Below, piece by piece: positions 45,316 through 64,000 of a stretch of 64,000 nucleotides of DNA. A program made the position numbers and the translations under genes. Below the pieces are notes generated by a model. That model was not told the origin of the DNA and ran no database searches. It saw only the letters and a program-made list of their open reading frames with translations. This stretch comes from Macrostomum lignano (lineage: Eukaryota): contig NIVC01001361.1 in the NCBI GenBank assembly GCA_002269645.1, positions 124,001-188,000 on the forward strand, written 5' to 3'. Every line of letters begins with the position of its first letter. Position 1 is the first letter of the stretch.

Positions 45316-45382
45316 TAGCGTTTTGCTGGATTTCTTAGGTTTTGAGTTTTTGTTGGGTTTTATAGGCTTTTGCAGGGCTTAC

Positions 45383-45832
45383 TCACAGATACTATAATAA
45401 CTAGCTGGGCCACTCTGGCATATACACTTAGTAAAACAGCTTTCTACTTTCAGTTCAGTAGCAAAGAAGAATACATAAGCTATTTTATAAAAAAGCCAGC
45501 TGAAACGACTCTGATAAGTTTAGAAGCAAGCTTGCGTAAACAGCTTGCTAATTGGTTCAGCAATAATGTACATTAGCCAGTCCACTGAAATGTACATGGC
45601 AGCTTTAGGCTGGAATTCCGAGAAAGGTAATAAAAATTGGGGTGGCGCCGGGGATAGTGTGGAAAGGCGCGGTTGGAGGGTTTAAGCTTGGGGGAGGGGG
45701 GGTAAGAGCCAAAAAATGAGCCTTGGCTTTAAAAATACATTAAAATGCTTCAGTTTAACTTACTACTGAACTGAAAGTAGCTTACACGCAAATGTGCTGA
45801 GTGGCCCATCTGGTTATTCTAGTATCGGTGTG
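45383..45832. mobile_element. MITE/foldback-like element with ~80-bp imperfect inverted arms, NF1 intron 20
   Basis: Perfect 18-bp IR ctactttcagttcagtag (45444-45461) / ctactgaactgaaagtag (45763-45780), plus outer arm similarity. Confidence 0.55.
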
Positions 45833-46003
45833 CTTACTAGGGATTTCATCCCAGGGAGAGATTTCTGAGCAGCTTTGGTGAGATTTCGGTTTATCTAATG
45901 ATGAGATCTCTGAGCTTATTGCACTTGCATTCACTCGGCATTATATTTACGAGTATGGGCAATTGGTTCCAAATCAAAATCGCCCCCGCCCCTTGATCTC
46001 CAG

Positions 46004-46228
46004 GCACTGCTGAACCTGGGCTCCAGCGACCCGAACCTGCGCTCAGCCGCCTACAATCTGCTCTGCGCTCTGACTCAAACCTTCGACCTCAAAATTGAAG
46101 GCCAACTATTGGAGACTACGGGCTTGTGCATTCCGGCCAATAACACTCTGTTTATTAAGGGCATTTCCAATACCCTGTCTCAGAATGAGTCCCATCTGAC
46201 GCTTGAGTTCCTGGAAGAGTGCATCCAG
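46004..46228 (+). CDS. NF1: NF1 exon 21
   Basis: ALLNLGSSDPNLRSAAYNLLCAL...EFLEECIQ. Confidence 0.95.
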
Positions 46229-46278
46229 GTGAGTGGCTTGTGCTTTTCTTTGCTTTTCTTTGCTTTTCTTTATTATGG

Positions 46279-46279
<1 letters not shown>

Positions 46280-46309
<30 letters not shown>

Positions 46310-46322
46310 CCTTCTGTCTGCC

Positions 46323-46359
<37 letters not shown>

Positions 46360-46422
46360 GCCTGCCTGCCTGCCTGCCTGCCTGTCTGCCTGTCTGTCTG
46401 CCTGCCTGCCTGCCTGCCTGCC

Positions 46423-46455
<33 letters not shown>

Positions 46456-46470
46456 GCCTGCCTGTCTGTC
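46280..46470. repeat. (TCTG/CCTG)n microsatellite, NF1 intron 21
   Basis: Visible. Confidence 0.95.
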
Positions 46471-46514
46471 TATCTTGAGGCGTCAACTATATGTACATTC
46501 CGCACTGTTTGCAG

Positions 46515-46885
46515 GGCTTCCAGCAGTCCTCCATCGAGATGAAGCACCTGTGCCTCGAGTACATGAGTCCCTGGCTAAAGAATCTGGTCCGCTTCTGTCG
46601 GCACCCGGACGACAACAAGCGCCAGAAGGTGGTGTGCATTCTGGACAAGCTCATCAGCGTCACGCTGTCGCAGGTGGAGATGTACCCCAACTTTCAGGCG
46701 AAAATCTGGTCGAACTTTGGCGAACTGCACGACTTATTGGACATTGTGCTGAATTGCTTTATTAAACGAAGCGTAGCCGGGGGTTTGGCAGCCTGCCAGC
46801 GGAGGTCATGGCCGACACGGCCGTCGCTCTGGCGGCGTCGAATGTTCAGCTAGTGTCAAAAAAGGTCATCACAAGACTGTGCCGC
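46515..46885 (+). CDS. NF1: NF1 exon 22 (apparent 1-bp deletion at 46787-46788)
   Basis: GFQQSSIEMKHLCLEYMSPWL..., then frame change to AEVMADTAVALAASNVQLVSKKVITRLCR. Confidence 0.9.
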
Positions 46886-46983
46886 GTAAGCAAGAATTAT
46901 TATCATCATCACTGTTTCTATTTTTATACTAGTTAGTAGTGTAGTATGCATTTCTGTTTGCAAAAATGCAATTGAAATTACAG

Positions 46984-47101
46984 ATAATCGCTGAGACTTG
47001 CACTTCGCCCACGTCAACTTTGGAGGCGCACAACATGTGGAATGACATCGCTATTCTACTGCGCTTCCTGCTAATGCTGTCATTTAATAATTCGTTAAAT
47101 G
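46984..47101 (+). CDS. NF1: NF1 exon 23
   Basis: IIAETCTSPTSTLE..MWNDIAILLRFLLMLSFNNSL. Confidence 0.93.
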
Positions 47102-47359
47102 GTAATATTCATCATTGTTTATATTTTTTTTCAATACATATCGGACATCATGTTTAGACTTTCTGTATTTACAAACTAACTTTAACTTCTTGTTAATTTT
47201 GTGTTTTTTCGATACATGCCTTATAGTTTAACAGTATAATGTCTTTTAATTAATTGTTTAATTAATTAATTTAAATTATGCAATAACTGTTAAGACAGGA
47301 TTTGAACTCCGGACTGCTCGTCGTCATAAGTCCCGCTTTTTTTTCTGCTTAACTTTCAG

Positions 47360-47497
47360 TTGCCGCCCATTTGCCGCTGCTGTTCCACATTGTCACACTG
47401 CTGGTGTGCACCGGCCCAGTGTCGCTGCGAGCCTCAATTCACGGCCTCGTTATCAACATTATTCATTCGCTGTGCACCTGCCAGCTCGAGCTTAGCG
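47360..47497 (+). CDS. NF1: NF1 exon 24
   Basis: AAHLPLLFHIVTLL...HGLVINIIHSLCTC. Confidence 0.93.
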
Positions 47498-47534
47498 GTA
47501 CGCTACACTCACCCTAACCCTTGGTTCACTAACC

Positions 47535-49120
47535 CCCCATCCAGTGATCCGCCCCCCCCATCTAGTGATCCGCCCCCCATCTAGTGATCCGCCCCCCCAT
47601 CTAGTGATCCGCCCTCCCATCTAGTGATCCGCCCCCCCATCTAGTGATCCGCCCCCCATCTAGTGATCCGCCCCCCATCTAGTGATCCGCCCCCCCATCT
47701 AGTGATCCGCCCCCCATCTAGTCGATCCTGATCCGCCCCATCTAGTTGATCCTGATCCGCCCCCCATCTAGTCGATCCTGATCCCCCCATCCAGTGATCC
47801 GCCCCCCCCATCTAGTGATCCGCCCCCCATCTAGTGATCCGCCCCCCCATCTAGTGATCCGCCCCCCCCATCTAGTGATCCGCCCCCCCATCTAGTGATC
47901 CGCCCCCCCATCTAGTGATCCGCCCCCCCATCTAGTGATCCGCCCCCCATCTAGTCGATCCTAATCCGCCCCCTCTCTAGTCGATCTTGATCCGCCCCCA
48001 TCTAGTTGATCCTGATCCCCCCATCCAGTCGATCTTGATCCGCCCCCCATCTAGTCGATCCTGATCCGCCCCATCTAGTTGATCCTGATCCGCCCCCATC
48101 TAGTCGATCCTGATCCCCCCATCCAGTCGATCTTGATCCGCCCCACCCCATCTAGTTGATCCTGATCCGCCCCCATCTAGTTGATCCTGATCCACCCCCC
48201 ATCTAGTCGATCCTGATCCCCCCATCCAGTCGATCTTGATCCGCCCCACCCCATCTAGTTGATCCTGATCCGCCCCCATCTAGTTGATCCTGATCCGCCC
48301 CCCATCTAGTCGATCCTGATCCCCCCATCCAGTCGATCTTGATCCGCCCCCCATCTAGTTGATCCTGATCCGCCCCCATCTAGTTGATCCTGATCCGCCC
48401 CCCATCTAGTCGATCCTGATCCCCCCATCCAGTCGATCTTGATCCGCCCCCCATCTAGTTGATCCTGATCCGCCCCCATCTAGTTGATCCTGATCCGCCC
48501 CCCATCTAGTCGATCCTGATCCCCCCATCTAGTTGATCCTGATCCGCCCCCATCTAGTCGATCCTGATCCCCCCATCTAGTTGATCCTGATCCGCCCCCA
48601 TCTAGTCGATCCTGATCCCCCCCTCTAGTTGATCCTGATCCGCCCCCATCTAGTCGATCCTGATCCCCCCATCTAGTTGATCCTGATCCGCCCCCATCTA
48701 GTCGATCCTGATCCGCCCCCTCTCTAGTCGATCCTGATCCCCCCATCTAGTTGATCCTGATCCGCCCCCATCTAGTCGATCCTGATCCCCCCATCTAGTT
48801 GATCCTGATCCGCCCCCCATCTAGTCGATCCTGATCCGCCCCCCTCTCTAGTCGATCCTGATCCCCCCATCTAGTTGATCCTGATCCGCCCCCCATCTAG
48901 TCAATCCTGATCCCCCCATCTAGTCAATCCTGATCCGCCCCCATCTAGTCAATCCTGATCACCCCATCTAGTCAATCCTGATCCGCTCCCATCTAGTCAA
49001 TCCTGATCCCCCCATCTAGTCAATCCTGATCCGCCCCCCCCATCTAGTCGATCCTGATCCCCCCATCTAGTCGACCCTGATCCCCCATCTAGCCGACCCT
49101 GATCCCCCATCTAGCCGGCC
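47535..49120. repeat. C-rich compound minisatellite (gatccgccccccatctagt / +cgatcct), NF1 intron 24
   Basis: About 1.6 kb. Confidence 0.95.
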
Positions 49121-49293
49121 CTGATTCGCTAAAGAATCAAACGCCCGATCTTTCAAAGCAGCTTGGAAACCCTTTTAGAACCATTAGGTTGAATAATCCG
49201 TTACAATCTCGTTAAGAATATACAAACACAATAAAAAGCCGTTTACCTAACTACTCTTTAACAACATTTCGCCTCCGCTATGTCCCAACACAG

Positions 49294-49593
49294 AGAGCAC
49301 CTTGCACCACCTAAAGCATTACCTGACCGAGTTCACCCTGACCGAGTACTACCAGGTATTCGGCATCTCTTCTATTAAAAGCGCCGCAGTGAGCGCTTTC
49401 CGTACCAAGTCAGGCGAGCGGACCGTCTCCAGCGCCGGCGAGACCGCATCTGCAGCTGCAGCTGCCGCCGCTGCCGCTGCCGCTGCTGCTGCCGCCGCCT
49501 CCGGCAACACTTCTTCTTCGGTGCATAGTGCCGAACGGCTGCCATTGAGCAGTCTGGAACTGCTCACTGACACCCTGCTGGAAGTTCTGTCGG
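49294..49593 (+). CDS. NF1: NF1 exon 25
   Basis: LTEFTL...FGISSIKSAAVSAFR...LTDTLLEVLS. Confidence 0.9.
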
Positions 49594-49699
49594 GTGAGAA
49601 TGATTTGATATTTGTCTTTAATAATTGCAATGGTAAAGACCAGAAATCCCACACTTGTCAGTGTTATCATTTTCACCCAAAGTTCACACTCATTGTCCC

Positions 49700-50893
49700 A
49701 ATCCCACACTGCTCATTGTCCCAAATCCCACACTGCTCATTGTCACAAATCCCCACACTGCTCAGTGTCCCAAATCCCCACACTGATCAGTGTCCCAAAT
49801 CCCCACACTGCTCATTGTCCCAAATCCCACACTGCTCATTTTCCCAAATCCCACACTGCTCACTGTCCCGAATCCCACACTGCTCACTGTCCCGAATCCC
49901 ACACTGCTCAGTGTCCCAATCCCACACTAATCACTGTCCCAAATCCCACACTGCTCACTGTCGCAAATCCCACACTGCTCAGTGTCCCAAATCCCACACT
50001 AATCACTGTCTCGAATCCCACACTGCTCATTGTCCCAAATCCCACACTGCTCATTTTCCCAAATCCCACACTGCTCACTGCCCCGAATCCTACACTGCTT
50101 ACTGTCCCAAATCCCACACTGCTCAGTGTCCCAAATCCCACACTGCTCACTGTCTCGAATCCCACACTGCTCATTGTCCCAAATCCCACACTGCTCAGTG
50201 TCGCAAATCCCACACTGCTCAGTGTCGCAAATCCCACACTGCTCACTGTCCCGAATCCCACACTGCTTACTGTCCCAAATCCCACACTGCTTAGTGTGCC
50301 AAATCCCACACTGCTCATTGTCCCAAATCCCACACTGCTCATTTTCCCAAATCCCACACTGCTCAGTGTCGCAAATCCCACACTGCTCACTGTCCCGAAT
50401 CCCACACTGCTTACTGTCCCAAATCCCACACTGCTTAGTGTGCCAAATCCCACACTGCTCAGTGTCCCAAATCCCACACTAATCACTGTCCCAAATCCCA
50501 CACTGCTCAGTGTCCCAAATCCCACACTGCTCAGTGTCCCAAATCCCACACTGCTCACTGTCCCGAATCCCACACTGCTTACTGTCCCAAATCCCACACT
50601 GCTCAGTGTCCAAATCCCACACTGCTCAGTGTCCCAAATCCCACACTAATCACTGTTCCAAATCCCACACTGCTCAGTGTCGCAAATCCCACACTGCTCA
50701 GTGTCGCAAATCCCACACTGCTCAGTGTCCCAAATCCCACACTGCTCACTGTCCCGAATCCCACACTGCTCAGTGTCGCAAATCCCACACTGCTCAGTGT
50801 CGCAAATCCCACACTGCTCAGTGTCCCAAATCCCACACTGCTCACTGTCCCGAATCCCACACTGCTCAGTGTCGCAAATCCCACACTGCTCAG
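49700..50893. repeat. Minisatellite, 24-bp unit (aaatcccacactgctcagtgtccc), NF1 intron 25
   Basis: Visible. Confidence 0.96.
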
Positions 50894-50927
50894 CATACTG
50901 GCTAATCATCGCCCCGTCCTCTCGCAG

Positions 50928-51374
50928 CCGTGATGAAGGACATCCCGAACTGCAACTGGCTGGAGCAGTGGACCCAGCTAGCCAAGAGATTCGCTTTCCA
51001 GCACAATCCGGCGCTGCAGTACCGCGCAATCATTGTACTCGGCTGCATCTCCAAGTCCGTATCGGAGAACGAGATCAAGCATCTGCTGCGAATCATGGTC
51101 AAATCGCTAGAGAGCTACGCGCGCGACCTCGAAGTCATCGACAAGGACGTCCGCATGCACAGGGGCGTCGAGTCGCAGTGGAACTCCGACCTGACGCTAA
51201 TCGAAGCTACTATAATGTCGGTGACTCGCCTGCTGCCGCTGTTGAACCCGAACTCGCCAATACATAAGCACATCTTCTGGATTGCCCTGTGCGTGCTGCA
51301 GTTGGACGAGGTCAGCCTGTACGCTGCCGGACTGGCCCTGCTAGAGCAGAGCTTGGACAATCTCGATAATCAGG
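50928..51374 (+). CDS. NF1: NF1 exon 26
   Basis: VMKDIPNCNWLEQWTQLAKRFAFQHNPALQ...LYAAGLALLEQ. Confidence 0.94.
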
Positions 51375-51484
51375 GTGAGAATTTGCTTACCTGCGTGTTT
51401 TTTAGTTATTTCAATTATCAAAACTGGGCCCAGTACTCATTGCTGTTAGTGATCATGGTCATAGAATCGCAAGTGAGGTCATAG

Positions 51485-51835
51485 CAGCTGGTGTTATAGC
51501 AAATTTGGTCATGACAGCTGGTATCATAGCAACTTTGGTCATAACAGCTGGTGTCATAGCAACTTTAGTCATAACAACTGGTGTCATAGCAACTTTAGTC
51601 ATAACAACTGGTGTCATAGCAACTTTAGTCATAACAACTGGTATCATAGCAACTTTAGTCATAACAGCTGGTGTCATAGCAACTTTAGTCATAACAACTG
51701 GTGTCATAGCAACTTTAGCCATAACAACTGGTGTCATAGCAACTTTAGCCATAACAACTGGTGTCATAGCAACTTTAGCCATAACAACTGGTGTCATAGC
51801 AACTTTAGTCATAACAACTGGTGTCATAGCAACTA
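51485..51835. repeat. Minisatellite, 30-bp unit, NF1 intron 26
   Basis: gtcatagcaactttagtcataacaactggt. Confidence 0.94.
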
Positions 51836-51926
51836 GGGTCATACCTCACTAGCTGCATTCTTAGATCTCCATAAAACAGCATGTTACAAAGCTCCGCTCC
51901 CCTGTCTGCCAATACAAATTTTCCAG

Positions 51927-52164
51927 GCATGTTCACCGATCGCTCATTGGAGAGCATAATGATGGAATACCGGCAGCCGCTAATCCTGCACATCTCTTAC
52001 AAACAGCTGGACAACTGTGTCGGCCTGTCATTCCGCGAGAATTTTCACTTCGCCCTAGTTGGCCACCTGTTGAAGGGTTTCCGCCATCCCAGTCCTAAAA
52101 CTCTGTCGCGCACAATTCGAGTTCTATCCATGCTACTGTCTATCGTGGCCAAGCCGGAGAAGCG
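51927..52164 (+). CDS. NF1: NF1 exon 27
   Basis: VGLSFRENFHFALVGHLLKGFRHP. Confidence 0.94.
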
Positions 52165-52286
52165 GTTAGTTAATAACAGAATAATGCGCGTATTGCACTA
52201 CTGCTCATCTGGATTAAGTAGTGCGATAAGTAAATTGTTATTATCTTAATACTTTTCTATTCTAATTCTGAATCGCCCAATAATAG

Positions 52287-52390
52287 AGACAAATACGAGG
52301 TGACGCCAAACAGCGTGGCTTACCTAACCGCCCTGGTCGCCGTCTCCGAGGAAGTCCGCAGCCGCTGCCATCTTCGATTTCATGTCAAGC
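52287..52390 (+). CDS. NF1: NF1 exon 28
   Basis: DKYEVTPNSVAYLTALVAVSEEVRSRCH. Confidence 0.92.
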
Positions 52391-52721
52391 GTAAGCGCTA
52401 TACATTGTATTGTATGTACTAATATCTTGAATTCGTACTAGTAGACGTACTACAGTACTGTAATAACTGATAATATGAGCCCTATTCAGTTGCGTACTAA
52501 CCGCGCCCGTTTTGCTTAACTTGCCCCCCCCCACTGGCGATTCTTTTCCACTAAAAATACTGTTCAAGGGCTAAAAGCAAAAATAGATCAGATTGGTCAA
52601 TCGTTTTGATCGGGTTATTTAGACCACTCGAAGGGGGTGCGAAAGTGGCTAGTCAACATATACTAAATCTTCGAGTCATGCATTGCCAATTTGCATCCCA
52701 TCCCGCCGCTGCACAATCCAG

Positions 52722-53035
52722 CCTGCCAGATGATGGGAGCAATGGTTGTTGAAAGCAATTCAACGGAGAGTGTGAGCGAACTGCAACAGCAGCAGCAGCA
52801 GCATTTGCAAGCCGTTTCGCCTGGCCTTGGCAACAGTTCTTCTCCGCCTCTGCTTCAACAGCAGCCGTCGCAAGCTTCACCATTCTCTAACTCTGCCGCT
52901 GGTCCAGTTGTTGTGCGTCAGAAGTGCTGCGACGCCGCCGCAGCTGCAGCAGCCGGCGGAGCTCCAGCTGATGCTGCTGGCACATCTGGCAGACCGACTG
53001 TCGCCCAGAAGCAACAGGCCTATCAGCTGTCTCAG
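52722..53035 (+). CDS. NF1: NF1 exon 29 (low-complexity linker)
   Basis: ccAG|CC phase matches exon 28; Q/A/S-rich ORF; donor CAG|GTGCGT phase 0. Poorly conserved, so weaker support. Confidence 0.7.
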
Positions 53036-53369
53036 GTGCGTCTTCTTTTATAATTAGTTTACGGTTTGCAAAGTTTTAGTTGTTTAATATTTTTTACAAA
53101 ATAATTTCATCTACGTTAATGGCGCTTTCCGCGTTTACTGTTTTAAACAAATCTTTTTATTATAATATAGCGCACTATAGACACTGCCTACAATGACTTA
53201 AAATTGATCTATCAGATTTAAGCAGTCAATTTCGCATACAATTATGCTATTAAGTTCTTTAGCTCAATTAATTCAATTAGGTTTTCTCTTCTGGACCAGT
53301 TTTGTTGTGTCAGCAATTTAATTATGAAATAATTAGTTATTGCAGGTGATAAAAGCTATCAAAAGCAGC

Positions 53370-54140
53370 TATCTACCCACCTTTTCTGCTATCTACCCGC
53401 CTCTGTCCGCTATCTACCCACCTCTCCGCTATCTACCCGCCTCGGCCCGCTACCTACCCGCCTCTGTCCGCTATCTATCCGCCTCTGTTCGCTATCTATC
53501 CGCCTCTGTTCGCTATCTATCCGCCTCTGTTCGCTATCTATCCGCCTCTGTCCGCTATCTATCCGCCTCTGTTCGCTATCTATCCGCCTCTGTTCGCTAT
53601 CTACCCACCTCCGTCCGCTACCTACCCGCCTCTGTTCGCTACCTACCCACCTCTGCCCGCTATCTACCCACCTCTGTCCGCTATTTACCCGCCTCTATCC
53701 GCTATCTACACACCTCTATCCGCTATCTATCCGCCTCTGTTCGCTATCTATCTGCCTCTGTCCGCTATCTATCCGCCTCTGTTCGCTATCTATCCGCCTC
53801 TGTCCGCTATCTATCCGCCTCTGTTCGCTATCTATCCGCCTCTGTTCGCTATCTATCCGCCTCTGTTCGCTATCTATCCGCCTCTGTCCGCTATCTATCC
53901 GCCTCTGTTCGCTATCTATCCGCCTCTGTCCGCTATCTATCCGCCTCTGTTTGCTATCTATCCGCCTCTGTCCGCTATCTACCCACCTCTCCGCTATCTA
54001 CCCGCCTCGGCCCGCTACCTACCCGCCTCTGTCCGCTATCTATCCGCCTCTGTTCGCTATCTATCCGCCTCTGTTCGCTATCTACCCACCTTTGTTCGCT
54101 ATCTACCCACCTCTCCGCTATCTACGCACCTTTGCCCGCC
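53370..54140. repeat. Minisatellite, 21-bp unit (ctatctatccgcctctgttcg), NF1 intron 29
   Basis: Visible. Confidence 0.94.
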
Positions 54141-54924
54141 CACCTCTGCCCACTATCTAGCCACCTCTGTCCGCCATTTATCTACCAACCTCCGCTACCT
54201 ACCCATATCTACGCTATCTACCCACTTATGTCTGTAGTCTACCCACCTGTCCGCTCCCTACCCAACCCATCTCATCCCTCTGTCTACCTATCAAATCAAA
54301 TTAGAAGGCTTGTAGATTAGATATTGAAATAAAACTGAAATCGAATGAAATAAGAATAAGGGGATTATTTTTTACACTTTTTTGTCAACTAATTTTACCT
54401 GTTTAATTTTCTCTGTTATTGCGCGAGCTGCGACCGGTTGCCATGCGGAAGTCCCCGCAATTACTCGATTGGCGATTAAAAAATAATTGCCTGAATTTCA
54501 TTCTGTAGTAGATTTTTCATGACCAACTTGTCCGAACAGCCTTGTTAATTCGAAGCAAGCATTAAATTGGTCAAAACATCAAAGCCTCCACTATCTGTTG
54601 GTATCTGTGTGTACTTGTGTGTGTGTGTTTTTTTTTAATTTACATTTTGTTGTCTGTTATAGCTTTGTGTTTTTTGTTCCCATTTTCCTACATTGCAATT
54701 TGCGTTTATTTTAACTAATTGAATCACCGATTTTACCTTTTAATTGTGCGCGCACTTGTGTTAGTTTGCTTTCCGTTCCGTGTTCCCTGCATAGTAACCC
54801 CAGCTGCACTTTTCACTTGGACTCTTAATCGGTTCTGTTTGCTCATTTTTTCTAACTATTTATGAGTAGCAATTATTGTTTGAAGTTTGTTTTGTTAATT
54901 AGTTGTCATGGTGAGGGTCAGAGC

Positions 54925-55163
54925 TTAACGGCCTTGAGAGCCAACCCCCCAAGGCGCAGTGAAGTGTACATGCCTAACAATTGATAAAGTTAGGGCCGCT
55001 GTACACTCCTGTGTGAGTGTGTGCCTGCGTACGTATCCGCGCGCTTGTGTGCCTGCTCAGGGGAGTCGGCGGAATGGGCAGTAATGCCTCTCGCCGGTTG
55101 TGTGCCCATGTCGCTTAAAGTGCGCCAGGGTGCACACAACCCCCCTGCCTCTAATAAAAAAAA
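54925..55163 (+). mobile_element. 5'-truncated SINE with A tail and 12-bp target-site duplication
   Basis: gagggtcagagc at 54913-54924 and 55164-55175; body is the reverse complement of 41012-41260. Confidence 0.85.
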
Positions 55164-55175
55164 GAGGGTCAGAGC

Positions 55176-55450
55176 GGCTCTGCAGCGGTGAACGCATCTG
55201 ACTCTCTCGCGCCGCGACCTCCCCCCCCCCTGGTTCCTGGTTCGGTTCCCCTCGCGACCACATTCATTAGGGGCTTTTGTGCGCGAAAATTGGCCGGGGG
55301 GTTGTCGTGCGATGCACAGCCCTGAGAGCCAACCCCCAAGGCACAGAAAGTGTACATGCCTGACAATTGGAAAGTCAAAGGGCTGCTGTACACCCTGTGT
55401 GAGCGTGTGTACAAGTGCGTGCCTGAGTACTGTATTTGCCCGCTTGTATG
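55176..55450 (+). mobile_element. Second, more diverged SINE copy
   Basis: tRNA-like head (..gcagcggtgaacgc..ggttcggttcc) plus the shared body. Confidence 0.6.
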
Positions 55451-55833
55451 TGCTCATGTTTATAATACACTGTAGTTGCCATGGTGACTCGCAAGCCTCG
55501 CTGAAGCGCAGCTAACAACTATTTATAGCCTGGATAGCTTATTTGCAGTCATACGTATTTAGCGGCCGTCTCTGAGGCCCCGAAAACCCCGAGGTTAGGG
55601 CCACAGACATTGGCTGCGACCATGTCAGTCAGATTCGAATGCTTTTCAAGTGGTTTCCTCCGAGTGCTAAGGCTTGTGAGCAGCACAGCAGAAGCTATAG
55701 TCTATGGTCTGAACCCCGGGGTTTTCGCTCTGCGGCCAGGCTGCTGGAGTGGCCCATCTAGGAGTATATAGAATCTGTGCTTCTACTCTGCTTAGCAAAT
55801 AAATAAACTGATCAAAGAACTTCAAGTGAGAAA

Positions 55834-55948
55834 ATGAGCGGATTGAGCGCCAGCGACAACCAGGATAGCCTTCTGGATGAGACGTCAAAATTGTCGGCTG
55901 CTTCTGCTACTGCTGCCAACTGCCACGGAGACTCGGGCGTAGAGAATG
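55834..55948 (+). CDS. Nested kinase exon 1
   Basis: MSGLSASDNQDSLLDETSKL...VEN G|GTAATT; phase 1 matches the next exon. Confidence 0.65.
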
Positions 55949-55969
55949 GTAATTTGCTGCTTTAATTGC

Positions 55970-56520
55970 GATCTAGATAGAGGAGAAGAACGATCTAGAT
56001 AGAGGAGAAGAGCGGTCTAGATAGAGGTGAAGAGCGGTCTAGATAGAGGTCAAGAGCGGTCTAGATAGAGGAGAAGAGCGGTCTAGATAGAGGAGAAGAG
56101 CGATCTAGATAGAGGTGAAGAGCGATCTAGATAGAGGTGAAGAGCGATCTAGATAGAGGAGAAGAGCGATCTAGATAGAGGTGAAGAGCGGTCTAGATAG
56201 AGGAGAAGAGCGGTCTAGATAGAGGTGAAGAGCGATCTAGATAGAGGTGAAGAGCGGTCTAGATAGAGGTCAAGAGCGGTCTAGATAGAGGAGAAGAGCG
56301 GTCTAGATAGAGGAGAAGAACGATCTAGATAGAGGAGAAGAGCGGTCTAGATAGAGGAGAAGAGCGGTCTAGATAGAGGAGAAGAGCGGTCTAGATAGAG
56401 GAGAAGAGCGGTCTAGATAGAGGAGAAGAGCGGTCTAGATAGAGGTGAAGAGCGGTCTAGATAGAGGTGAAGAGCGGTCTAGATAGAGGAGAAGAGCGGT
56501 CTAGATAGAGGTGAAGAGCG
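55970..56520. repeat. Minisatellite, 22-bp unit (tctagatagaggagaagagcgg), kinase intron 1
   Basis: Visible. Confidence 0.95.
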
Positions 56521-56556
56521 GTCTTCAGATTTGAGCATCTGTAATCCACCCCGCAG

Positions 56557-56835
56557 AATGTACAGTAATCAAAAGCCAACCAGCCGTAGCCAGTTGCCAT
56601 GACGAGGACGATGGCGAAGAGCCCAGCCGGCCTCAGCCGAATCTGCGTGTCCCGGCCGCCCAGCTGGTGGGCGCCAAGCCGGCCAGCTATCGCCAGCTTG
56701 AAGACTCGGTCTGGCCGGGGGCGTTCCGCCAGCGGATGGCCATTCCCTATGCTGAGTACGCTGAGCACTGCCCGCTCGGCCGCATCAATTGGTCCGAATG
56801 GGCGCTGGCTGAACGTGAGGACACTATTCGAAAAG
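56557..56835 (+). CDS. Nested kinase exon 2
   Basis: ccgcAG|AA...EDTIRK G|GTGAGC. Confidence 0.8.
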
Positions 56836-56858
56836 GTGAGCGGCTTTAACTGTATCGA

Positions 56859-58403
56859 GATTTAATTGGTACTCTGAGCCATGATTTAATTGGCACTCTG
56901 AGCCATGATTTAATTGGTACTCTGAGCCAGGATTTAATTGGTACTCTGAGCCATGATTTAATTGGTACTCTGAGCCATGATTTAATTGGTACTCTGAGCC
57001 AGGATTTAATTGGTACTCTGAGCCATGATTTAATTGGTACTCTGAGCCAGGATTTAATTGGTACTCTGAGCCAGGATTTAATTGGTACTCTGAGCCATGA
57101 TTTAATTGGTACTCTGAGCCATGATTTAATTGGTACTCTGAGCCAGGATTTAATTGGTACTCTGAGCCATGATTTAATTGGTACTCTGAGCCAGGATTTA
57201 ATTGGTACTCTGAGCCATGATTTAATTGGTACTCTGAGCTAGGATTTAATTGGTACTCTGAGCCATGATTTAATTGGTACTCTGAGCCAGGATTTAATTG
57301 GTACTCTGAGCCAGGATTTAATTGGTACTCTGAGCCATGATTTAATTGGTACTCTGAGCCATGATTTAATTGGTACTCTGAGCCATGATTTAATTGGTAC
57401 TCTGAGCCAGGATTTAATTGGTACTCTGAGCCATGATTTAATTGGTACTCTGAGCCAGGATTTAATTGGTACTCTGAGCCAGGATTTAATTGGTACTCTG
57501 AGCTAGGATTTAATTGGTACTCTGAGCCATGATTTAATTGGTACTCTGAGCCATGATTTAATTGGTACTCTGAGCCAGGATTTAATTGGTACTCTGAGCT
57601 AGGATTTAATTGGTACTCTGAGCCATGATTTAATTGGTACTCTGAGCCATGATTTAATTGGTACTCTGAGCCAGGATTTAATTGGTACTCTGAGCCATGA
57701 TTTAATTGGTACTCTGAGCCAGGATTTAATTGGTACTCTGAGCCAGGATTTAATTGGTACTCTGAGCCATGATTTAATTGGTACTCTGAGCCATGATTTA
57801 ATTGGTACTCTGAGCCATGATTTAATTGGTACTCTGAGCCAGGATTTAATTGGTACTCTGAGCCAGGATTTAATTGGTACTCTGAGCCATGATTTAATTG
57901 GTACTCTGAGCCAGGATTTAATTGGTACTCTGAGCCAGGATTTAATTGGTACTCTGAGCTAGGATTTAATTGGTACTCTGAGCCAGGATTTAATTGGTAC
58001 TCTGAGCCAGGATTTAATTGGCACTCTGAGCTAGGATTTAATTGGTACTCTGAGCCATGATTTAATTGGTACTCTGAGCCAGGATTTAATTGGTACTCTG
58101 AGCCAGGATTTAATTGGTACTCTGAGCCATGATTTAATTGGTACTCTGAGCCAGGATTTAATTGGCACTCTGAGCCAGGATTTAATTGGTACTCTGAGCT
58201 AGGATTTAATTGGTACTCTGAGCCAGGATTTAATTGGTACTCTGAGCCATGATTTAATTGGTACTCTGAGCCAGGATTTAATTGGTACTCTGAGCCAGGA
58301 TTTAATTGGTACTCTGAGCTAGGATTTAATTGGTACTCTGAGCCAGGATTTAATTGGTACTCTGAGCTAGGATTTAATTGGTACTCTGAGCCAGGATTTA
58401 ATT
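56859..58403. repeat. Homogeneous minisatellite, 24-bp unit (gatttaattggtactctgagccat), about 64 copies, kinase intron 2
   Basis: Variants end ccat/ccag/ctag. Confidence 0.97.
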
Positions 58404-58486
58404 CGAATTTTCTATGTGTTATCTGTGGGTTACTTCTTTTTTAGTTTGCTATAACCATGAGGAACTATCTCATCAACCTTCCACAG

Positions 58487-58806
58487 GCCACCACGCGGTT
58501 TGTCCTCTATTCCGCAGCCGCAAGACCGGCACCCTCTACCGGTGCAAGATAGTCACCTGCAGCCGGGTGCACTTTAACCTCACCGCTCTGGGCTTCAAGG
58601 CTGGCGAATTTGAGCGCCAGATTCGAGCCTGCCTGACGGAACGGCAGCTGCTGTTCGCCTTTGACCATCCGTTTGTGCGCAGCGGGCTGGGCTTCTTTAC
58701 TGACGCCTACTGCAACTTTGGCGTCTTTCTCGAGGAGTTTCCGCACGGAACTCTGTTAGATTATTATGAGAAAAATGAGGACAATAGGATTGTTAGCAAT
58801 TTTAAG
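58487..58806 (+). CDS. Nested kinase exon 3 (N-lobe)
   Basis: HHAVC..KTGTLYRCK..FERQI..FDHPFV..FLEEFPHGTLL. Confidence 0.88.
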
Positions 58807-58824
58807 GTGAGTTTATTCAACTAA

Positions 58825-58985
58825 GTTGATATGGATTAAGCTAAACCGATATGGATTAATCCAGCCGGATATGGATTAAGCTAAGCCGATATGGATTAAG
58901 CTAAGCTGATATGGATTAAGCTAAGCTGATATGGATGAAACTAAGCTGATATGGATGAAACTAAGCCGCTATGGACTAACCTAAG
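58825..58985. repeat. Minisatellite, 20-bp unit (gatatggattaagctaagcc), kinase intron 3
   Basis: Visible. Confidence 0.9.
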
Positions 58986-59136
58986 CCGAAGATTATAACG
59001 AACTCTAATATGAAATCATCTAGGTTAAAATAAATCACACTAATCCGATGGGGATTAAGCCGGGATGTTTAGTGACAATCTGATCAAGAAGGAGCTTTAA
59101 CGCCCCCGCCCCCCCCCCAACATTTGCGTCCCGCAG

Positions 59137-59368
59137 GAGGACGCCATCAGAGCGATCGCTGCCCAGACGGTGCTGGCCCTGGAGTACCTGCACTGCGTTG
59201 GCTGTGTGCATCGCGACGTTCAATCCGCTAATCTGCTTGTCGACGCCAGGGGCTACGTGAAGCTCACCGACTTTGCCATCACGGCTGTGCTGCCGGAGGA
59301 TGGGCAGCCGTTGCGCGATGTCACGTGTTTTCGGTACTACGCGGCGCCTGAGTACTTTAATGGCAAAG
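59137..59368 (+). CDS. Nested kinase exon 4 (catalytic loop, DFx, APE)
   Basis: LALEYLH..VHRDVQSANLLVDARGYVKLTDFA...YYAAPEY. Confidence 0.93.
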
Positions 59369-59479
59369 GTGCGCGGCTGGGGTCCTGCTGACTCGCTTGA
59401 GGTGCCTTTTAGTTGAAGCTTAGGGCAGAAGAGTAGACCTAAATATGCAGAAAATAGACTTGAATCGACAAAGTAGACC

Positions 59480-60200
59480 TAAATAGAAAAGGTAGATCCA
59501 ATAAGGCAGAGTAAACCTAGTTAGACAGAGTAGACCTAATTAGAAAGAAAAGACCTAATTAGCCAAAAATCAGACCTAATTCGACTGTGTAAACCTAATT
59601 AGAAAGAGCAGACCTAATTAGAAAGGGCAGACCTAATTAGAAAGGGCATACCTAATTAGAAAGGGCATACCTAATTAGAAAGAGAAGACCTAATTAGCCA
59701 AAAATCAGACCTAATTAGACTGTGTAAACCTAATTAGAAAGAGCAGACCTAATTAGAAAGGGCAGACCTAATTAAACAAAGATCAGAACTAATTAGAAAG
59801 AGTAGACCTAATTAGAAAGAGTAGACCTAATTAAAAAGAGTAGACCTAATTAGACTGTGTAAACCTGATTAGTAAGAGCAGACCTAATTAGAAAGTGTAA
59901 ACCTAATTAGAAAGAGTAGACCTAATTAGAAAGAGTAGACCTAATTAGAAAAAGTAGACCTAATTAGAAAGAGTAGACCTAATTAGACTGTGTAAACCTA
60001 ATTAGAAAGAGTAGACCTAATTAGAAAGAGTAGACCTAATTAGACTGTGTAAACCTAATTAGAAAGGGCAGACCTAATTGGACAGAGCAGAGCTAATTTA
60101 GACAGAGAGCAGAGCTAATTAGACAGAGTAAACTTAATTAGACAGAGTAAACCTAATTAGACAGAGTAAACCTAATTAGACAGAGAGTAGACTTAATTCG
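59480..60200. repeat. Degenerate minisatellite, 19-bp unit (agacctaattagaaagagt), kinase intron 4
   Basis: Visible. Confidence 0.9.
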
Positions 60201-60372
60201 ATAGACAGTAGACGTTGGACATAAATTAGATTCAATTATGAAGAGCGTTGACCTAATTGTGAAATAAGACTTACACCTGAAGACAGTGTTTCCAGTAGAG
60301 AGTCAGAGTGTAGCAGCCTCCTATTGGTCCTGAAGCACTGTGTGTGCACACTGTACATGCATTCAATTGCAG

Positions 60373-60552
60373 GCTACGGCTGTTCCGTAGATTTTTACGC
60401 GCTGGGCCTGGTGCTGTACGAACTGCTCAGGCAGGAGTGCTTCTGCGAACAGGAGGACGTTTTTGATGCCGACGGCCGCGTGGACTGGGGCCTGCTGCCC
60501 GAGGCGCTGGCCGCTGAGGAGCATCGGCGCCGGCTCACTCAGCGGCTGCTGG
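60373..60552 (+). CDS. Nested kinase exon 5
   Basis: YGCSVDFYALGLVLYELL. Confidence 0.9.
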
Positions 60553-60649
60553 GTGAGGATCAGACTGCATCGGTTGAAACATCTGCGGTTTTGGGATGTG
60601 GGATTTCTGTATGAGGATAGCCTATGGAATTCTTTGGGATATCTATGCT

Positions 60650-60900
60650 ATTTTTACATATTATCTGTATGGGATCTCTATATAGGATCTCTATATGGCA
60701 TCTCTATATGGGATCTTTATGGGATATCTATATGGGATCTTTATGTGGGATCTCTATGTGGGATATCTACATGTATATGGGATCTCTACCGGTATATTGA
60801 ATCTCTACGTATATACGATATCTATGGGATATCTGTATAGGATCTGCATGTGGTCTATATATGGATATCTAAAAGATATCTATATGGAAACTCTGTAATC
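60650..60900. repeat. Degenerate short repeat (atgggatctctat), kinase intron 5
   Basis: Visible. Confidence 0.8.
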
Positions 60901-60944
60901 CCTACATAGGATATCATTTAGCTTTCTCCGCCCCCATCGATCAG

Positions 60945-61303
60945 ACGCCCAAGCGATCAGCGGACAGGCTCCGTCAACGTCCGCCGCCAAAATGGCCGCC
61001 GCCGCCGCGCCGCCGCCGGTGAAGCGGCCGGTGCCGTCGCCTGAGGCGCGCGACTTCGTCGAAGACTGCCTGCTGTGCGAGCCGGGCTGCCGGCCGGACC
61101 GCCGCACCGCCAGGTTCTACGCCTGGTTCAGCGGCATCGACTTCGACCGGCTGTACAATCGGACCCTTGACCTGCCCTGGCGACCGCCTGTGGGCACCTC
61201 AGTGTCCTACCAGCCCGACATTGATGAGGAATATCCCATCGCTAAGGTGCTGGAGCGAAAACCCGTGCCGCCCGAGTTCCAGCCCTATCAGCACCTGTTC
61301 TAG
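60945..61303 (+). CDS. Nested kinase exon 6 (AGC-type tail)
   Basis: SPEARDFVEDCL...WFSGIDFDRLYNRTLDLPWRPPV...QHLF*. Confidence 0.88.
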
Positions 61304-61401
61304 CCCTAATACATTTTTAACACAATTATATGTTCGTGTATATGCCAGATCCAGGCCACCTACCCTGTGACTGTGAAGACTCAAACGAAACTTCATCAGT
61401 A

Positions 61402-61935
61402 TCTAGAGAGAGGGGATCAGCGATCTAGAGAGAGGGGATCAGCGATCTAGAGAGAGGGGATCAGCGATCTAGAGAGAGGGGATCAGCGATCTAGAGAGAG
61501 GGGATCAGCGATCTAGAGAGAGGGGGTCAGCAATCTAGAGAGAGGGGATCAGCGATCTAGAGAGAGGGGATCAGCGATCTAGAGAGAGGGGGTCAGCAAT
61601 CTAGAGAGAGGGGATCAGCGATCTAGAGAGAGGGATCAGCGATCTAGAGAGAGGGGATCAGCGATCTAGAGAGAGGGATCAGCGATCTAGAGAGAGGGGA
61701 TCAGCGATCTAGAGAGAGGGATCAGCGATCTAGAGAGAGGGGATCAGCGATCTAGAGAGAGGGATCAGCGATCTAGAGAGAGGGGATCAGCGATCTAGAG
61801 AGAGGGGATCAGCGATCTAGAGAGAGGGGATCAGCGATCTAGAAGGAGGGGATGAGCGATCTAGAGAGAGGGGATCAGCGATCTAGAAGAGGGGATGAGC
61901 GATCTAGAGAGGAGTGAAGAGCGATGTAGAGAGTA
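61402..61935. repeat. Minisatellite, 22-23-bp unit (gatcagcgatctagagagagggg), downstream of the kinase stop
   Basis: Visible. Confidence 0.94.
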
Positions 61936-62828
61936 ATACTTCTATTTTAATTTCTCTACTTTAGCTTAACCCTAGTAATGGTGGAAGTAGTTTAAAATTA
62001 TTTTAGAATCTATAACTATTTTGAAGAACTTTTAATTTTTGTTAAGTAGTTTTTTGTCAGAAATACAACAACAAAAATTATATAATCAAATAAACGCTTG
62101 CTTAATAGCTGGGATAGTTATTTAAATTAGGCAAAAATTTAAAACGTGTCTTGTCTTGCTAATTTACCACACTTTATGCCTATTTTGCATCTTATTACTA
62201 TAAGTAGTGCTTGGCTGCAGTATTTAAGTTTCTGCCGCAAAATCAAAAGTTTTTTGGATGCGGCAGAAACCGTGAAACCAGCGCGCTTCCGAGTCACTTC
62301 TTGGCTAATTAAAATTACCTAGCATAGATAATACTACTGGTGGATATTGGTTTAAGTAGTATATTTTATCGTTTTATGTTTTTATTTAGAAATTGCTGTG
62401 CGATTCTATATTTCGACGTGTGATCAGCCCTTCCGTTCTTATAATGCTTTTAGTCATTTGTGTTTACAATATTGTCTCTCACGTGCTGTATGCTCCGAAA
62501 CGGTGTGTCCTATCCCATTGGCATCCCATTGTTATAGGTGTATTACACTCATTAGTGATAACCAGTAGAACTATGGGCTTTGTAAGCTTATGTAATAATT
62601 CTAGTGTTAGGTAACCGGAATTTTAATAGATAATTTATACCATTGCATTCTATTTAGACCGTTTTTTGTTTATTTAAAGCAGGCGCCTTAGCGGAAAGTC
62701 TGAATCACGTGAACATAGTGAGCTTGGGTTTTGTGGTGGATACAACCGTAGACAAAAGTTGTACTTTTGCTTTCTACAAGCAGACCCATTAAATTCGCAT
62801 CTGTTTGAAGCTGCACTGCACTAAATCC

Positions 62829-63020
62829 TGTGCTCTCTCATTGGCTGAGCTAGATTGGCCCTGCCCACTAGGCTGTCTCCTTACTGCTCTCTCATTGGCT
62901 GAGCTAGATTGGCCCTGCCCACTAGGCTGTCTCCTTACTGCTCTCTCATTGGCTGAGCTAGATTGGCCCTGCCCACTAGGCTGTCTCCTTACTGCTCTCT
63001 CATTGGCTGAGCTAGATTAG
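62829..63020. repeat. 3.5 copies of a 54-bp unit, each with two ATTGG (reverse CCAAT) motifs
   Basis: tgctctctcattggctgagctagattggccctgcccactaggctgtctccttac. Confidence 0.9.
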
Positions 63021-63544
63021 GCCAGCCCCCTATGCTGAGTTTCGTCCGTCTTGCCTTCACTTGTGTACATTGATTTTAATGCTTTTTGTTCTTTCTTAAC
63101 CCCATATGGTCCTGAGGCTGTTAACCCGGAGGAAGGAAAGGAAATTCTTTGTCTGCCACATTGAACTTACTGTGCAAACAAACTACTGAAAAGAGTAGAT
63201 GCTCTTCATCCTTAAGTTAAAAGTTGCATATCTAGTTATTTTAGTATCTGCAGTGCTGTGCGACTTAAGCATGTTATTCTGACTTTCTGTATGAAACACA
63301 AGACGGAAAACAGAATGTAAAGATGGTATAAATTTAATAGAATTAGTAAACCTGTGAATGGATATACTAGACACATGTGGATACATAATCCCGCTTAAAT
63401 CCTGTTTACGTGTAGCCAATGTGTTTATTTATATATAGTAGCCATTTTGTGTTTCGCAACAATAGCTGTGCTATGCATAGCCGAATGTCGTACACTCACT
63501 CACTCTCACTCCTCTTCTTCACCTTCATTCTCCTGGCTGTGTAG

Positions 63545-64000
63545 GCTAATTTCCTATCCCCAGTGCTCCCAGTCGGCATGGCAACCGCGTCCAATATGAA
63601 ATTGTGGAAAAGCTTTGAGATTGACATTCAGACTCAGCGCGCCGTGTTGAAATCGCAGCGCGCCACTGTTGGCGCCGGCGGAGCCTCTGGCAGCCTCGGT
63701 GCCGGTAGCGGCAGCGGCTGCGGCGGCCTTCCGCCAAGGACGCGCAGCGTTGATGCTCGAAATTCGCCTCAGCAGCCGCCGCCAGCCCCCGTTCAGCCGC
63801 CCCGCCGCCGCCCCCGCCGCCTCCGCCGACGTCGACGTCGTCTGCTGGTGCCAGCGGCTTCGTTGGCAACAACAATGGCCAGTCGGCGGTGTCGGGAATG
63901 GGTGACCGCGCCGGTGCGCCAGCGGCGTCTGCAACTGCTGCCAGTCACGACGACAACGTGCTGTTAAATGCGGAGGTTATCAGAGACGAGCGAACCCAGG
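63545..64000 (+). CDS. NF1: NF1 exon 30 (apparent 1-bp deletion at 63800-63803; runs off the window)
   Basis: Polypyrimidine tract + TAG|GCT phase 0. KLWKSFE; after restoring one C it reads ...DDNVLLNAEVIRDERTQ, matching the conserved NF1 SNVLLDxEVLxDxxIQA. Confidence 0.85.

What the first reader, a model, noticed from the sequence alone, without database searches (positions are those of the whole stretch)
53036..63544. Complete six-exon kinase gene nested on the SAME strand inside an NF1 intron
The conserved NF1 C-terminal block is absent after exon 29 until 63545, where a phase-matched acceptor leads to DDNVLLNAEVIRDERTQ. Between them lies an intact 494-aa kinase gene in the same orientation. 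Multi-exon same-strand nesting is uncommon: vertebrate NF1 hosts OMG, EVI2A and EVI2B, but antisense and in another intron. Full-length NF1 must skip six exons and the guest's poly(A) site (AATAAA candidate at 62089). In Drosophila and mammals NF1 is linked to cAMP/PKA signalling, so a PKA-like guest hints at coupled or mutually exclusive expression (speculation).
Basis: partly seen in the sequence, partly recalled or inferred. Interest (0 to 1): 0.85.

Follow-up and report, generated by a model that had tools for sequence, protein, structure and literature searches.

The report
Kinase gene nested inside flatworm NF1
In the flatworm Macrostomum lignano, an intact six-exon gene for an unusual lineage-specific protein kinase sits, in the same orientation, inside a 10.5-kb intron near the 3' end of the neurofibromin (NF1) gene. 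This is a real but fairly ordinary nested gene that the public annotation missed.

Summary
The window is Macrostomum lignano scaffold NIVC01001361.1 (assembly GCA_002269645.1). The structural observation holds. NF1 exons lie on the + strand from about 18.8 kb to 53035 and resume at 63545. Between them is a complete six-exon, 494-aa kinase gene (55834-61303), identical to the annotated BOX15_Mlig023784g1. A second scaffold and an older assembly show the same arrangement, so misassembly is unlikely.

One correction. In this window the frame entered at 63545 does not reach DDNVLLNAEVIRDERTQ. A C-run at 63800-63803 is one base shorter than in the sister scaffold, which reads straight through. A second one-base homopolymer deletion, at 46779-46783, explains why the public NF1 model stops at 2131 aa. 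Both look like long-read consensus errors.

The guest is only loosely PKA-like. It is a Macrostomum-restricted, AGC-group kinase with no glycine loop, HRDVQSAN and DFA. I found no RNA evidence for the 53035->63545 junction, so splicing of NF1 across the guest is inferred.

Multi-intron same-strand guests are a minority class in Drosophila, and orientations are roughly balanced in mammals. M. lignano also has widespread SL trans-splicing and polycistronic transcription units. This is a new example of a known kind, of modest interest.

The parts
18809..53035 (+). NF1 (neurofibromin) host gene, the part upstream of the host intron. It consists of many exons separated by minisatellite-rich introns.
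   Evidence: The public gene model entering L002 from upstream has RasGAP, CRAL_TRIO_2 and PH_NF1 domains. N-terminal NF1-like ORF pieces start at 18809. Orthologue tblastn hits lie at 47359-47481, 49254-49439, 50921-51376, 51920-52165 and 52276-52392.
46779..46783 (+). G5 homopolymer, one base shorter than the G6 in the sister scaffold. It frameshifts an NF1 exon and creates the stop at 46851-46853 where the public 2131-aa NF1 model ends.
   Evidence: alignment. Frames read. The annotated gene ends at L002:1020, which is window 46853.
52722..53035 (+). It encodes a low-complexity linker and ends in phase 0 at donor CAG|GTGCGT.
   Evidence: Sequence. The spliced model of exons 26-30 stays open through this exon.
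53036..63544 (+). NF1 host intron, 10,509 bp. About 4.6 kb of it is tandem minisatellite.
55834..55948 (+). Kinase exon 1 (ATG at 55834; an in-frame TAA lies upstream at 55804).
56557..56835 (+). Kinase exon 2.
58487..58806 (+). Kinase exon 3. The acceptor is cacag|GCCACC. An upstream alternative acceptor at 58445 would add 14 aa, but neither the public model nor the paralogues use it.
59137..59368 (+). Kinase exon 4 (encodes HRDVQSAN, DFA and APE).
60373..60552 (+). Kinase exon 5.
60945..61303 (+). Kinase exon 6, encoding the AGC-type C-terminal tail. Stop TAG at 61301-61303.
62089..62094 (+). Candidate poly(A) signal of the kinase. It is the only + strand AATAAA between the kinase stop and NF1 exon 30.
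63545..64000 (+). NF1 exon after the host intron (phase-0 acceptor). It continues to window-equivalent 64021 in L002. Four more NF1 exons follow, with the NF1 stop near 66.1 kb and an AATAAA about 60 nt later.
63800..63803 (+). C4 homopolymer, against C5 in the sister scaffold. It shifts this copy of NF1 exon 30 out of frame.

Best explanation
A bona fide protein-coding gene for a Macrostomum-specific, divergent AGC-group kinase (BOX15_Mlig023784g1, 494 aa, six exons) is nested in the sense orientation inside a 10.5-kb intron of the M. lignano neurofibromin gene. The intron lies in the poorly conserved linker that precedes the conserved C-terminal block of NF1.

Shown:
- The anatomy of host and guest.
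- Phase compatibility of the two flanking NF1 exons.
- The same arrangement on two scaffolds.

Inferred:
- Full-length NF1 mRNA is made by cis-splicing 53035->63545 over the whole guest.
- The kinase is expressed as its own mRNA, ending at a poly(A) site near 62.1 kb.
- The guest most likely arose by DNA-level duplication of a member of a small Macrostomum kinase family into a long, repeat-rich intron.
- The two frameshifts in this copy of NF1 are most likely homopolymer consensus errors of the long-read assembly.
For: Identity of the sequence: L002:1-18167 matches window 45834-64000 at 100%, on NIVC01001361.1.

Guest gene:
- All six exons have GT-AG sites, consistent phases and an intact ORF identical to P0001.
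- The public model comes from a genome-guided RNA-seq transcriptome assembly (PMC5730564).
- Paralogue-type mRNA contigs L003 and L004 encode a 506-aa protein of the same family. They have their own UTRs, the same C-terminus and no NF1 sequence.
- GC3 of the kinase CDS is 0.73, against 0.68 for NF1 exons and 0.34 GC for unique intron sequence.

Host gene:
- NF1 domains lie upstream.
- NF1 orthologue matches lie on both sides, on the same strand.
- The spliced model of exons 26-30 is open across the 53035|63545 junction. With the sister scaffold's extra C it runs on into DDNVLLNAEVIRDERTQALMLAVL and then VTLVRNTTDENESQILYEYLAEASVVF.
- NF1 ends with its own stop and an AATAAA about 2.6 kb downstream of 63545.

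Replication: L001 (NIVC01000352.1) has the same order with different repeat copy numbers. The ML2-assembly model P0005 physically links kinase exons 5-6 to NF1 exon 30 and beyond.
Against: - No RNA-derived sequence spanning 53035->63545 was found in the protein collection.
- No public gene model joins the NF1 exons on the two sides of the guest.
- One ab initio model (P0005) instead splices from inside kinase exon 6 to 63545.
- This copy of NF1 carries two frameshifts as assembled.
- The kinase lacks a Gly-rich loop and has K168->Q and DFG->DFA, so catalytic activity is uncertain.
- The two scaffolds are nearly identical in introns too, so they give no test of purifying selection.
Confidence: 0.75

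Rival explanations
1. Intronic operon. The kinase has no promoter of its own. Its mRNA is cut out of the NF1 pre-mRNA by SL trans-splicing upstream of the ATG plus polyadenylation near 62.1 kb. Each primary transcript would then yield either a kinase mRNA or a full-length NF1 mRNA.
For: - In M. lignano about 30% of genes are SL trans-spliced and about 15% lie in operons.
- About 7% of assembled transcripts are multi-gene precursors (PMC8629364; PMC5730564).
- Guest and host share a strand.
- A [T/C]TNCAG acceptor-type motif lies at 55543-55548, 285 nt upstream of the ATG.
Against: - There are no SL-read data here.
- The only motif match is 285 nt upstream, with three upstream ATGs in between.
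- The paralogue mRNA contig L003 shows no SL sequence at its 5' end, although the contig may be incomplete.
- Non-conserved genes are under-represented among trans-spliced genes.
Confidence: 0.15
2. NF1 is split in this lineage. The N-terminal gene ends before the kinase. The C-terminal exons from 63545 on are expressed separately, either from the ATG in exon 30 (MATAS...) or fused to the kinase as in model P0005.
For: - P0005 fuses kinase exons 5-6 to NF1 exon 30, and P0194 starts at MATAS in exon 30.
- No public model bridges the intron.
Against: - P0005 and P0194 come from an error-rich older assembly and contain several frameshifts.
- P0005 needs a weak internal donor (CCC|GTGCCG) and discards the family's conserved C-terminus, which both P0003 and the mRNA-derived P0004 retain.
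- Exons 29 and 30 are phase-compatible.
- From established knowledge, the C-terminal HEAT block is an integral part of neurofibromin in all animals.
- The truncation of the public NF1 model is explained by a homopolymer indel, not by biology.
Confidence: 0.07
3. The copy of NF1 in this window is a decaying duplicate. The two one-base deletions are real, so the host gene on this scaffold is non-functional, and nesting is relevant only at the sister locus.
For: - There are two independent frameshifts in the same copy, at 46779-46783 and 63800-63803.
- The sequenced DV1 line carries an extra duplicated large chromosome, which relaxes constraint on one copy (PMC8629364).
Against: - Both changes are single-base deletions in G or C homopolymers, the typical long-read consensus error.
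- All other coding exons compared are 100% identical between the scaffolds.
Confidence: 0.2
4. The kinase is a dead relic or a prediction artefact rather than a functional gene.
For: The active-site motifs are degenerate: no GxGxxG, HRDVQSAN and DFA. No expression entry was found in one supplementary data set.
Against: - The 1485-nt ORF across six exons is intact, with all splice sites canonical.
- The same unusual motifs are conserved in paralogues at 55-57% identity, one of them from mRNA.
- K72, E91, D166, N171 and D184 equivalents are retained.
- The kinase core is modelled confidently, with pLDDT 85-98 over about residues 240-340.
Confidence: 0.05

Closest known systems
Same-strand nested (intronic) protein-coding genes, as catalogued in Drosophila melanogaster (PMC3814207) and in mouse and human (PMC11694760)
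   Same: The guest lies wholly inside one intron of a longer host, on the same strand. The guest is a young, lineage-restricted member of a gene family, and the host is a long conserved gene with a long intron.
   Different: The guest has five introns. In Drosophila, 72.5% of same-strand guests are single-exon and the multi-exon ones have a median of one intron. The organism also has SL trans-splicing and operons, which flies and mammals lack.
Human NF1 intron 27b hosting OMG, EVI2A and EVI2B (established knowledge, not tested here)
   Same: The host gene family is the same, and NF1 tolerates embedded genes in a large intron.
   Different: Those guests are antisense and lie just after the GAP-related domain. 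Here there is one sense-strand guest in the C-terminal linker intron. The guests are unrelated, so the two cases arose independently.
M. lignano polycistronic transcription units and SL trans-spliced operons (PMC5730564, PMC8629364)
   Same: Genes on the same strand could be co-transcribed and resolved by RNA processing. Repeat-rich spacers break RNA-seq-based models, as happened to NF1 here.
   Different: Operon genes are arranged in tandem, not one inside another's intron. Trans-splicing of this kinase has not been shown.
AGC-group kinases: PKA catalytic subunit, STK32A/YANK1, PKG
   Same: These are the best sequence and fold matches. An AGC-type C-terminal tail aligns with the PKA tail, and the K72, E91, D166, N171 and D184 equivalents are present.
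   Different: - Only about 25% identity to PKA in the alignment.
- No Gly-rich loop.
- HRDVQSAN instead of HRDLKPEN, and DFA instead of DFG.
- A 12-aa insert after strand beta-3 and a roughly 60-aa insert in the C-lobe.
- A conserved N-terminal extension of about 130 aa.
- Full-length relatives are found only in Macrostomum-type sequences.

Membership tests
Nested gene (guest entirely within one intron of a host, same strand) | Host exons lie on both sides of the guest, on one strand of one contiguous molecule | tested here: met
   NF1 orthologue matches lie upstream to 52392 (plus the linker exon to 53035) and downstream from 63545, all on the + strand. Two scaffolds and the ML2-based model agree.
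Nested gene (guest entirely within one intron of a host, same strand) | The flanking host exons are joined in the mature host mRNA | not testable with these tools
   Only indirect evidence is available. The phase is 0/0, and the ORF is continuous when the sister scaffold's C5 run is used. No RNA-derived protein spans the junction.
Nested gene (guest entirely within one intron of a host, same strand) | The guest has its own complete ORF with start, stop and splice sites, and does not overlap host exons | tested here: met
   Six exons, 494 aa, GT-AG throughout, spanning 55834-61303 inside intron 53036-63544.
Nested gene (guest entirely within one intron of a host, same strand) | The guest is transcribed as an independent mRNA with its own 5' end and poly(A) site | tested here: inconclusive
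   The public model comes from an RNA-seq-guided assembly. The paralogue mRNA is stand-alone. There is a single AATAAA candidate at 62089. No 5' or 3' end data exist for this locus.
Neurofibromin (NF1) | RasGAP domain followed by Sec14/CRAL-TRIO and NF1-type PH domains | tested here: met
   Precomputed Pfam hits PF00616, PF13716 and PF21877 on the upstream gene model.
Neurofibromin (NF1) | Conserved C-terminal block (...SEEVRSRC..., NVLL..., LYEYLAEASVVF..., GFGGLWRF...) | tested here: met
   (hits to insect, mollusc and vertebrate neurofibromins)..
PKA catalytic subunit (orthologue) | Canonical motifs GxGxxG, HRDLKPEN and DFG | tested here: not met
   No Gly-rich loop; HRDVQSAN; DFA. The same substitutions occur in paralogues P0003 and P0004.
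PKA catalytic subunit (orthologue) | Close sequence similarity to PKA, above that to other AGC kinases | tested here: not met
   PKA scores E=1e-20, with AKT, PKG and STK32A within a factor of about 50. Fold matches tie STK32A, PKG and PKA.
AGC-group protein kinase (broad sense) | Kinase fold with AGC-type C-terminal tail, and best matches among AGC kinases | tested here: met
   Pfam Pkinase at 3.5e-32. The tail aligns with PKA residues 294-319. Foldseek TM-score, normalised to the target, is about 0.70 to AGC kinases.
SL trans-spliced / operon gene of M. lignano | SL-containing reads mapping to an acceptor upstream of the ATG | not testable with these tools
   Only a motif match at 55543-55548.

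The most novel reading that the evidence does not exclude
The kinase is produced from the NF1 primary transcript itself, as an 'intronic operon'. SL trans-splicing and polyadenylation inside the intron would release a kinase mRNA at the expense of full-length NF1. Host and guest outputs would then be co-transcribed but mutually exclusive on each transcript. This would also suggest that SL trans-splicing relaxes the selection against multi-intron same-strand nested genes that is seen in flies.
Probability: 0.15. Interest if true: 0.55.

Novelty: new member of a known kind. Interest (0 to 1): 0.3.

Why it matters
- It corrects the gene model of a disease-relevant, conserved gene in a regeneration model organism. 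M. lignano NF1 is not 2131 aa. It continues for at least nine more exons, across a nested gene, to a stop near window-equivalent 66.1 kb.
- It shows how two single-base homopolymer errors and repeat-filled introns broke the annotation.
- It provides a clean test case: a five-intron sense-strand guest in an essential-type host. With the RNA-seq, SL-read and T-fill data that already exist for this species, one can ask whether organisms with SL trans-splicing handle same-strand nesting differently.
- The guest belongs to a small, Macrostomum-restricted kinase family with an unusual active site. That may interest kinase evolution specialists.
- None of this changes general understanding of nested genes.

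Tried and rejected
- My first kinase model used the acceptor at 58445 and gave 508 aa. I rejected it for 58487 because the public model and both paralogues read IRK|GHHA.
- I searched 5.8 billion proteins with a peptide spanning exons 27-31 to find RNA-derived sequences across the junction. It returned only orthologues from other animals and two error-ridden old M. lignano models.
- I tried to use the two scaffolds to test for purifying selection. The kinase CDS has 0 differences in 1485 nt, but unique intron segments are also about 100% identical, so there is no signal.
- I looked for small introns to explain the frame change in exon 30. The candidates are 69 and 75 bp, both multiples of three, so they do not restore the frame. 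The sister scaffold shows a one-base indel instead.
- I looked for transposon-like terminal repeats flanking the guest and found none.
- Rfam found no RNA genes in the window.
- The genomic context of paralogue P0003 and fragment P0202 could not be looked up; neither is on record.
- Searches for 'Mlig023784' in the paper library and in one supplementary set found nothing.
- A 22-aa insertion in NF1 exon 26 (51119-51184) is not a missed intron: it has no GT...AG and is GC-rich coding sequence.

Full report
**Identity of the sequence.** A protein search with the conceptual kinase returned a 494-aa Macrostomum lignano protein, BOX15_Mlig023784g1 (P0001), at E=0. That exact protein is encoded on two scaffolds of assembly GCA_002269645.1. 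Locus L002 (NIVC01001361.1) is 100% identical to window 45834-64000, so the window is NIVC01001361.1:124001-188000. L001 (NIVC01000352.1) is a second copy, 96-98% identical overall, and most of the differences are repeat copy numbers. The sequenced DV1 line carries a duplicated large chromosome (PMC8629364), which explains two near-identical copies.

**The guest gene.** Reading the sequence gives six + strand exons:
- 55834-55948
- 56557-56835
- 58487-58806
- 59137-59368
- 60373-60552
- 60945-61303

All have AG|...|GT boundaries, and the intron phases 1, 1, 0, 1, 1 match across every junction. My first choice of acceptor for exon 3 (58445) added 14 aa. There is an in-frame stop 30 nt upstream of the ATG. 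AATAAA at 62089-62094 is the only + strand AATAAA before the next NF1 exon. The public annotation derives from a genome-guided RNA-seq transcriptome (PMC5730564), so the exon structure has transcript support, although I could not inspect the reads. Two Logan RNA contigs from another sample (L003, L004) carry an intronless 506-aa member of the same family. It has its own 5' and 3' UTRs and the same C-terminus, so the family is expressed as stand-alone mRNAs.

**The host gene.**
- The gene model that enters L002 from upstream has RasGAP, CRAL_TRIO_2 and PH_NF1 domains.
- NF1-like coding pieces start near 18.8 kb in the window.
- With neurofibromin orthologues as probes, tblastn finds + strand exons at 47.4, 49.3, 50.9, 51.9 and 52.3 kb. 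It finds nothing conserved up to 63545, then exons at 64.6 and 64.8 kb in window-equivalent L002 coordinates. Two further terminal exons, at about 65.4 and 65.9 kb, were placed with the M. lignano model P0005 and by translation.
- NF1 ends with its own stop near 66.1 kb, followed by an AATAAA about 60 nt later.
- The next gene, SMG6-like, starts about 2.8 kb further on.
- The exon 52722-53035 and the exon starting at 63545 encode the poorly conserved linker between ...SEEVRSRCHL... and ...NVLL.... In orthologues this linker is also long and variable.
- A spliced model of exons 26-30 is open across 53035|63545, phase 0 on both sides.

So the kinase lies wholly within one NF1 intron of 10,509 bp, on the host strand.

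**A correction to the observation.** In this window the frame entered at 63545 ends at TAA 63965-63967. DDNVLLNAEVIRDERTQ is in the -1 frame. Alignment with L001 shows a single difference responsible for this: a C4 run at 63800-63803 where L001 has C5. With C5 the exon reads ...PVQPPPPPPPPPPPTSTSS...SHDDNVLLNAEVIRDERTQALMLAVL|gt without interruption.

The same kind of lesion occurs at 46779-46783, which is G5 where L001 has G6. It shifts the frame of an upstream NF1 exon and creates the stop at 46851-46853, exactly where the public 2131-aa NF1 model ends. Two single-base deletions in G/C homopolymers of a long-read assembly are most simply consensus errors. A real decaying duplicate cannot be excluded without short reads.

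**Could it be an artefact?**
- Misassembly is unlikely. Two scaffolds assembled with different repeat lengths have the same order. A model from the older ML2 assembly (P0005) physically joins kinase exons 5-6 to NF1 exon 30 and later exons.
- There is no second NF1 start between the two halves, so the exons from 63545 on are not from another paralogue.

**What the kinase is.**
- Pfam Pkinase matches at 3.5e-32.
- The best solved-structure sequence match is PKA C-alpha at 1e-20, closely followed by AKT1, PKG and STK32A.
- An AlphaFold model has mean pLDDT 70.7, with the core above 85 and the N-terminal ~135 residues mostly disordered. It matches STK32A, PKG and PKA with TM-score about 0.70 relative to the target.
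- In alignment with PKA, whose sequence I supplied from memory, the equivalents of K72, E91, D166, N171, D184, APE and R280 are present, and the AGC C-tail aligns.
- However, there is no GxGxxG loop. The catalytic loop is HRDVQSAN (K168->Q) and DFG is DFA. There are inserts after strand beta-3 and in the C-lobe.
- Paralogues at 55-57% identity share all of these peculiarities.
- An exhaustive HMMER search of 1.84 billion cluster representatives found full-length relatives only among Macrostomum-type sequences. Scores then drop from 582 to 188 bits, into generic kinases.

'PKA-like' is therefore true only at group level. The protein is a lineage-restricted atypical kinase, possibly a pseudokinase. 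A functional tie to NF1 and cAMP signalling is unsupported.

**How it probably works (inferred).** RNA polymerase transcribing NF1 must pass through the guest. Full-length NF1 requires pairing of the 53035 donor with the 63545 acceptor. That means ignoring five internal acceptors, five donors and the guest's poly(A) signal. Splicing of the NF1 donor to kinase exon 2 would be out of frame (phase 0 against 1). Ending in kinase exon 6 would truncate NF1.

Such interference is the explanation proposed for the rarity of intron-containing sense-strand guests in Drosophila. There, 71% of guests are antisense, 72.5% of sense guests are single-exon, and the rest have a median of one intron (PMC3814207). 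In mouse and human the orientations are roughly balanced (PMC11694760).

M. lignano adds a twist. [quoted passage not shown] The kinase could therefore be processed out of the NF1 precursor. I found only one acceptor-type motif, 285 nt upstream of the ATG with upstream ATGs in between, so I rate this at about 0.15.

**What could not be done.** No RNA-derived sequence spanning the host junction exists in the searchable collections. The near-identity of the two scaffolds, in introns as well, gives no selection test. The genomic context of the paralogue was not retrievable.

**Verdict.** The nested arrangement is real and was not captured by the public annotation. The signalling speculation is not supported. 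This is a new example of a known kind of gene organisation. It is somewhat unusual in having five introns on the host strand, and it is mainly useful for re-annotating M. lignano NF1 and as a test case for RNA processing in a trans-splicing animal.

Noticed in passing
window 46779-46783: A G5 homopolymer (G6 in the sister scaffold) frameshifts an NF1 exon and produces the premature stop at 46851-46853. This explains why the public M. lignano NF1 protein is only 2131 aa and lacks all later exons.
   Followed up: yes
window 55968-56524, 56859-58403, 58828-58989, 59472-60198, 60664-60773, 61401-61933; also 53368-54124 and 62831-63037: Each of the five kinase introns, its 3' flank and the rest of the host intron carries its own minisatellite, with periods of 13-54 bp and up to 64 copies. 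Together they make up about 44% of the 10.5-kb intron. NF1 introns elsewhere in the window look the same (for example 22.6-23.2, 43.1-43.7, 49.6-50.9 and 51.4-51.85 kb). Copy numbers differ between the two scaffolds.
   Followed up: partly
window 54925-55161, 55305-55456, 44493-44607, 41012-41265 (inverted): A short dispersed repeat of about 120-250 bp, at 76-87% identity, is present in three different NF1 introns, including twice in the host intron just upstream of the kinase. It may be a SINE- or MITE-like element.
   Followed up: partly
window 569-1935, - strand: ORF pieces encode a lipoyl domain and a 2-oxoacid dehydrogenase acyltransferase catalytic region. This looks like a DLST-like (E2 of 2-oxoglutarate dehydrogenase) gene upstream of NF1. 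It was identified by eye only.
   Followed up: no
window 9678-12298, - strand (GC 52-63%): ORFs with reverse-transcriptase (YADDLALL) and endonuclease-like motifs suggest a GC-rich non-LTR retrotransposon fragment between the upstream gene and NF1.
   Followed up: no
window 51119-51184: A 22-aa insertion (ARDLEVIDKDVRMHRGVESQWN) lies in an otherwise well-conserved NF1 exon, relative to orthologues. It is not an unrecognised intron, because it has no GT...AG.
   Followed up: partly
L002:23037 onward (window-equivalent about 68.9 kb): The next + strand gene after NF1 encodes an EST1/PIN-domain (SMG6-like) protein of 1300 aa, about 2.8 kb beyond the NF1 stop. NF1, the kinase and this gene are all on the same strand, so a shared transcription unit is conceivable in this operon-rich genome.
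   Followed up: no
P0002, P0005, P0194, P0202 (UniProt / ML2-assembly models): Several database proteins for this locus are frameshifted or chimeric predictions from the older assembly. One is auto-named 'greatwall' kinase, and another fuses the kinase to the NF1 C-terminus. They should not be used as evidence of isoforms.
   Followed up: yes
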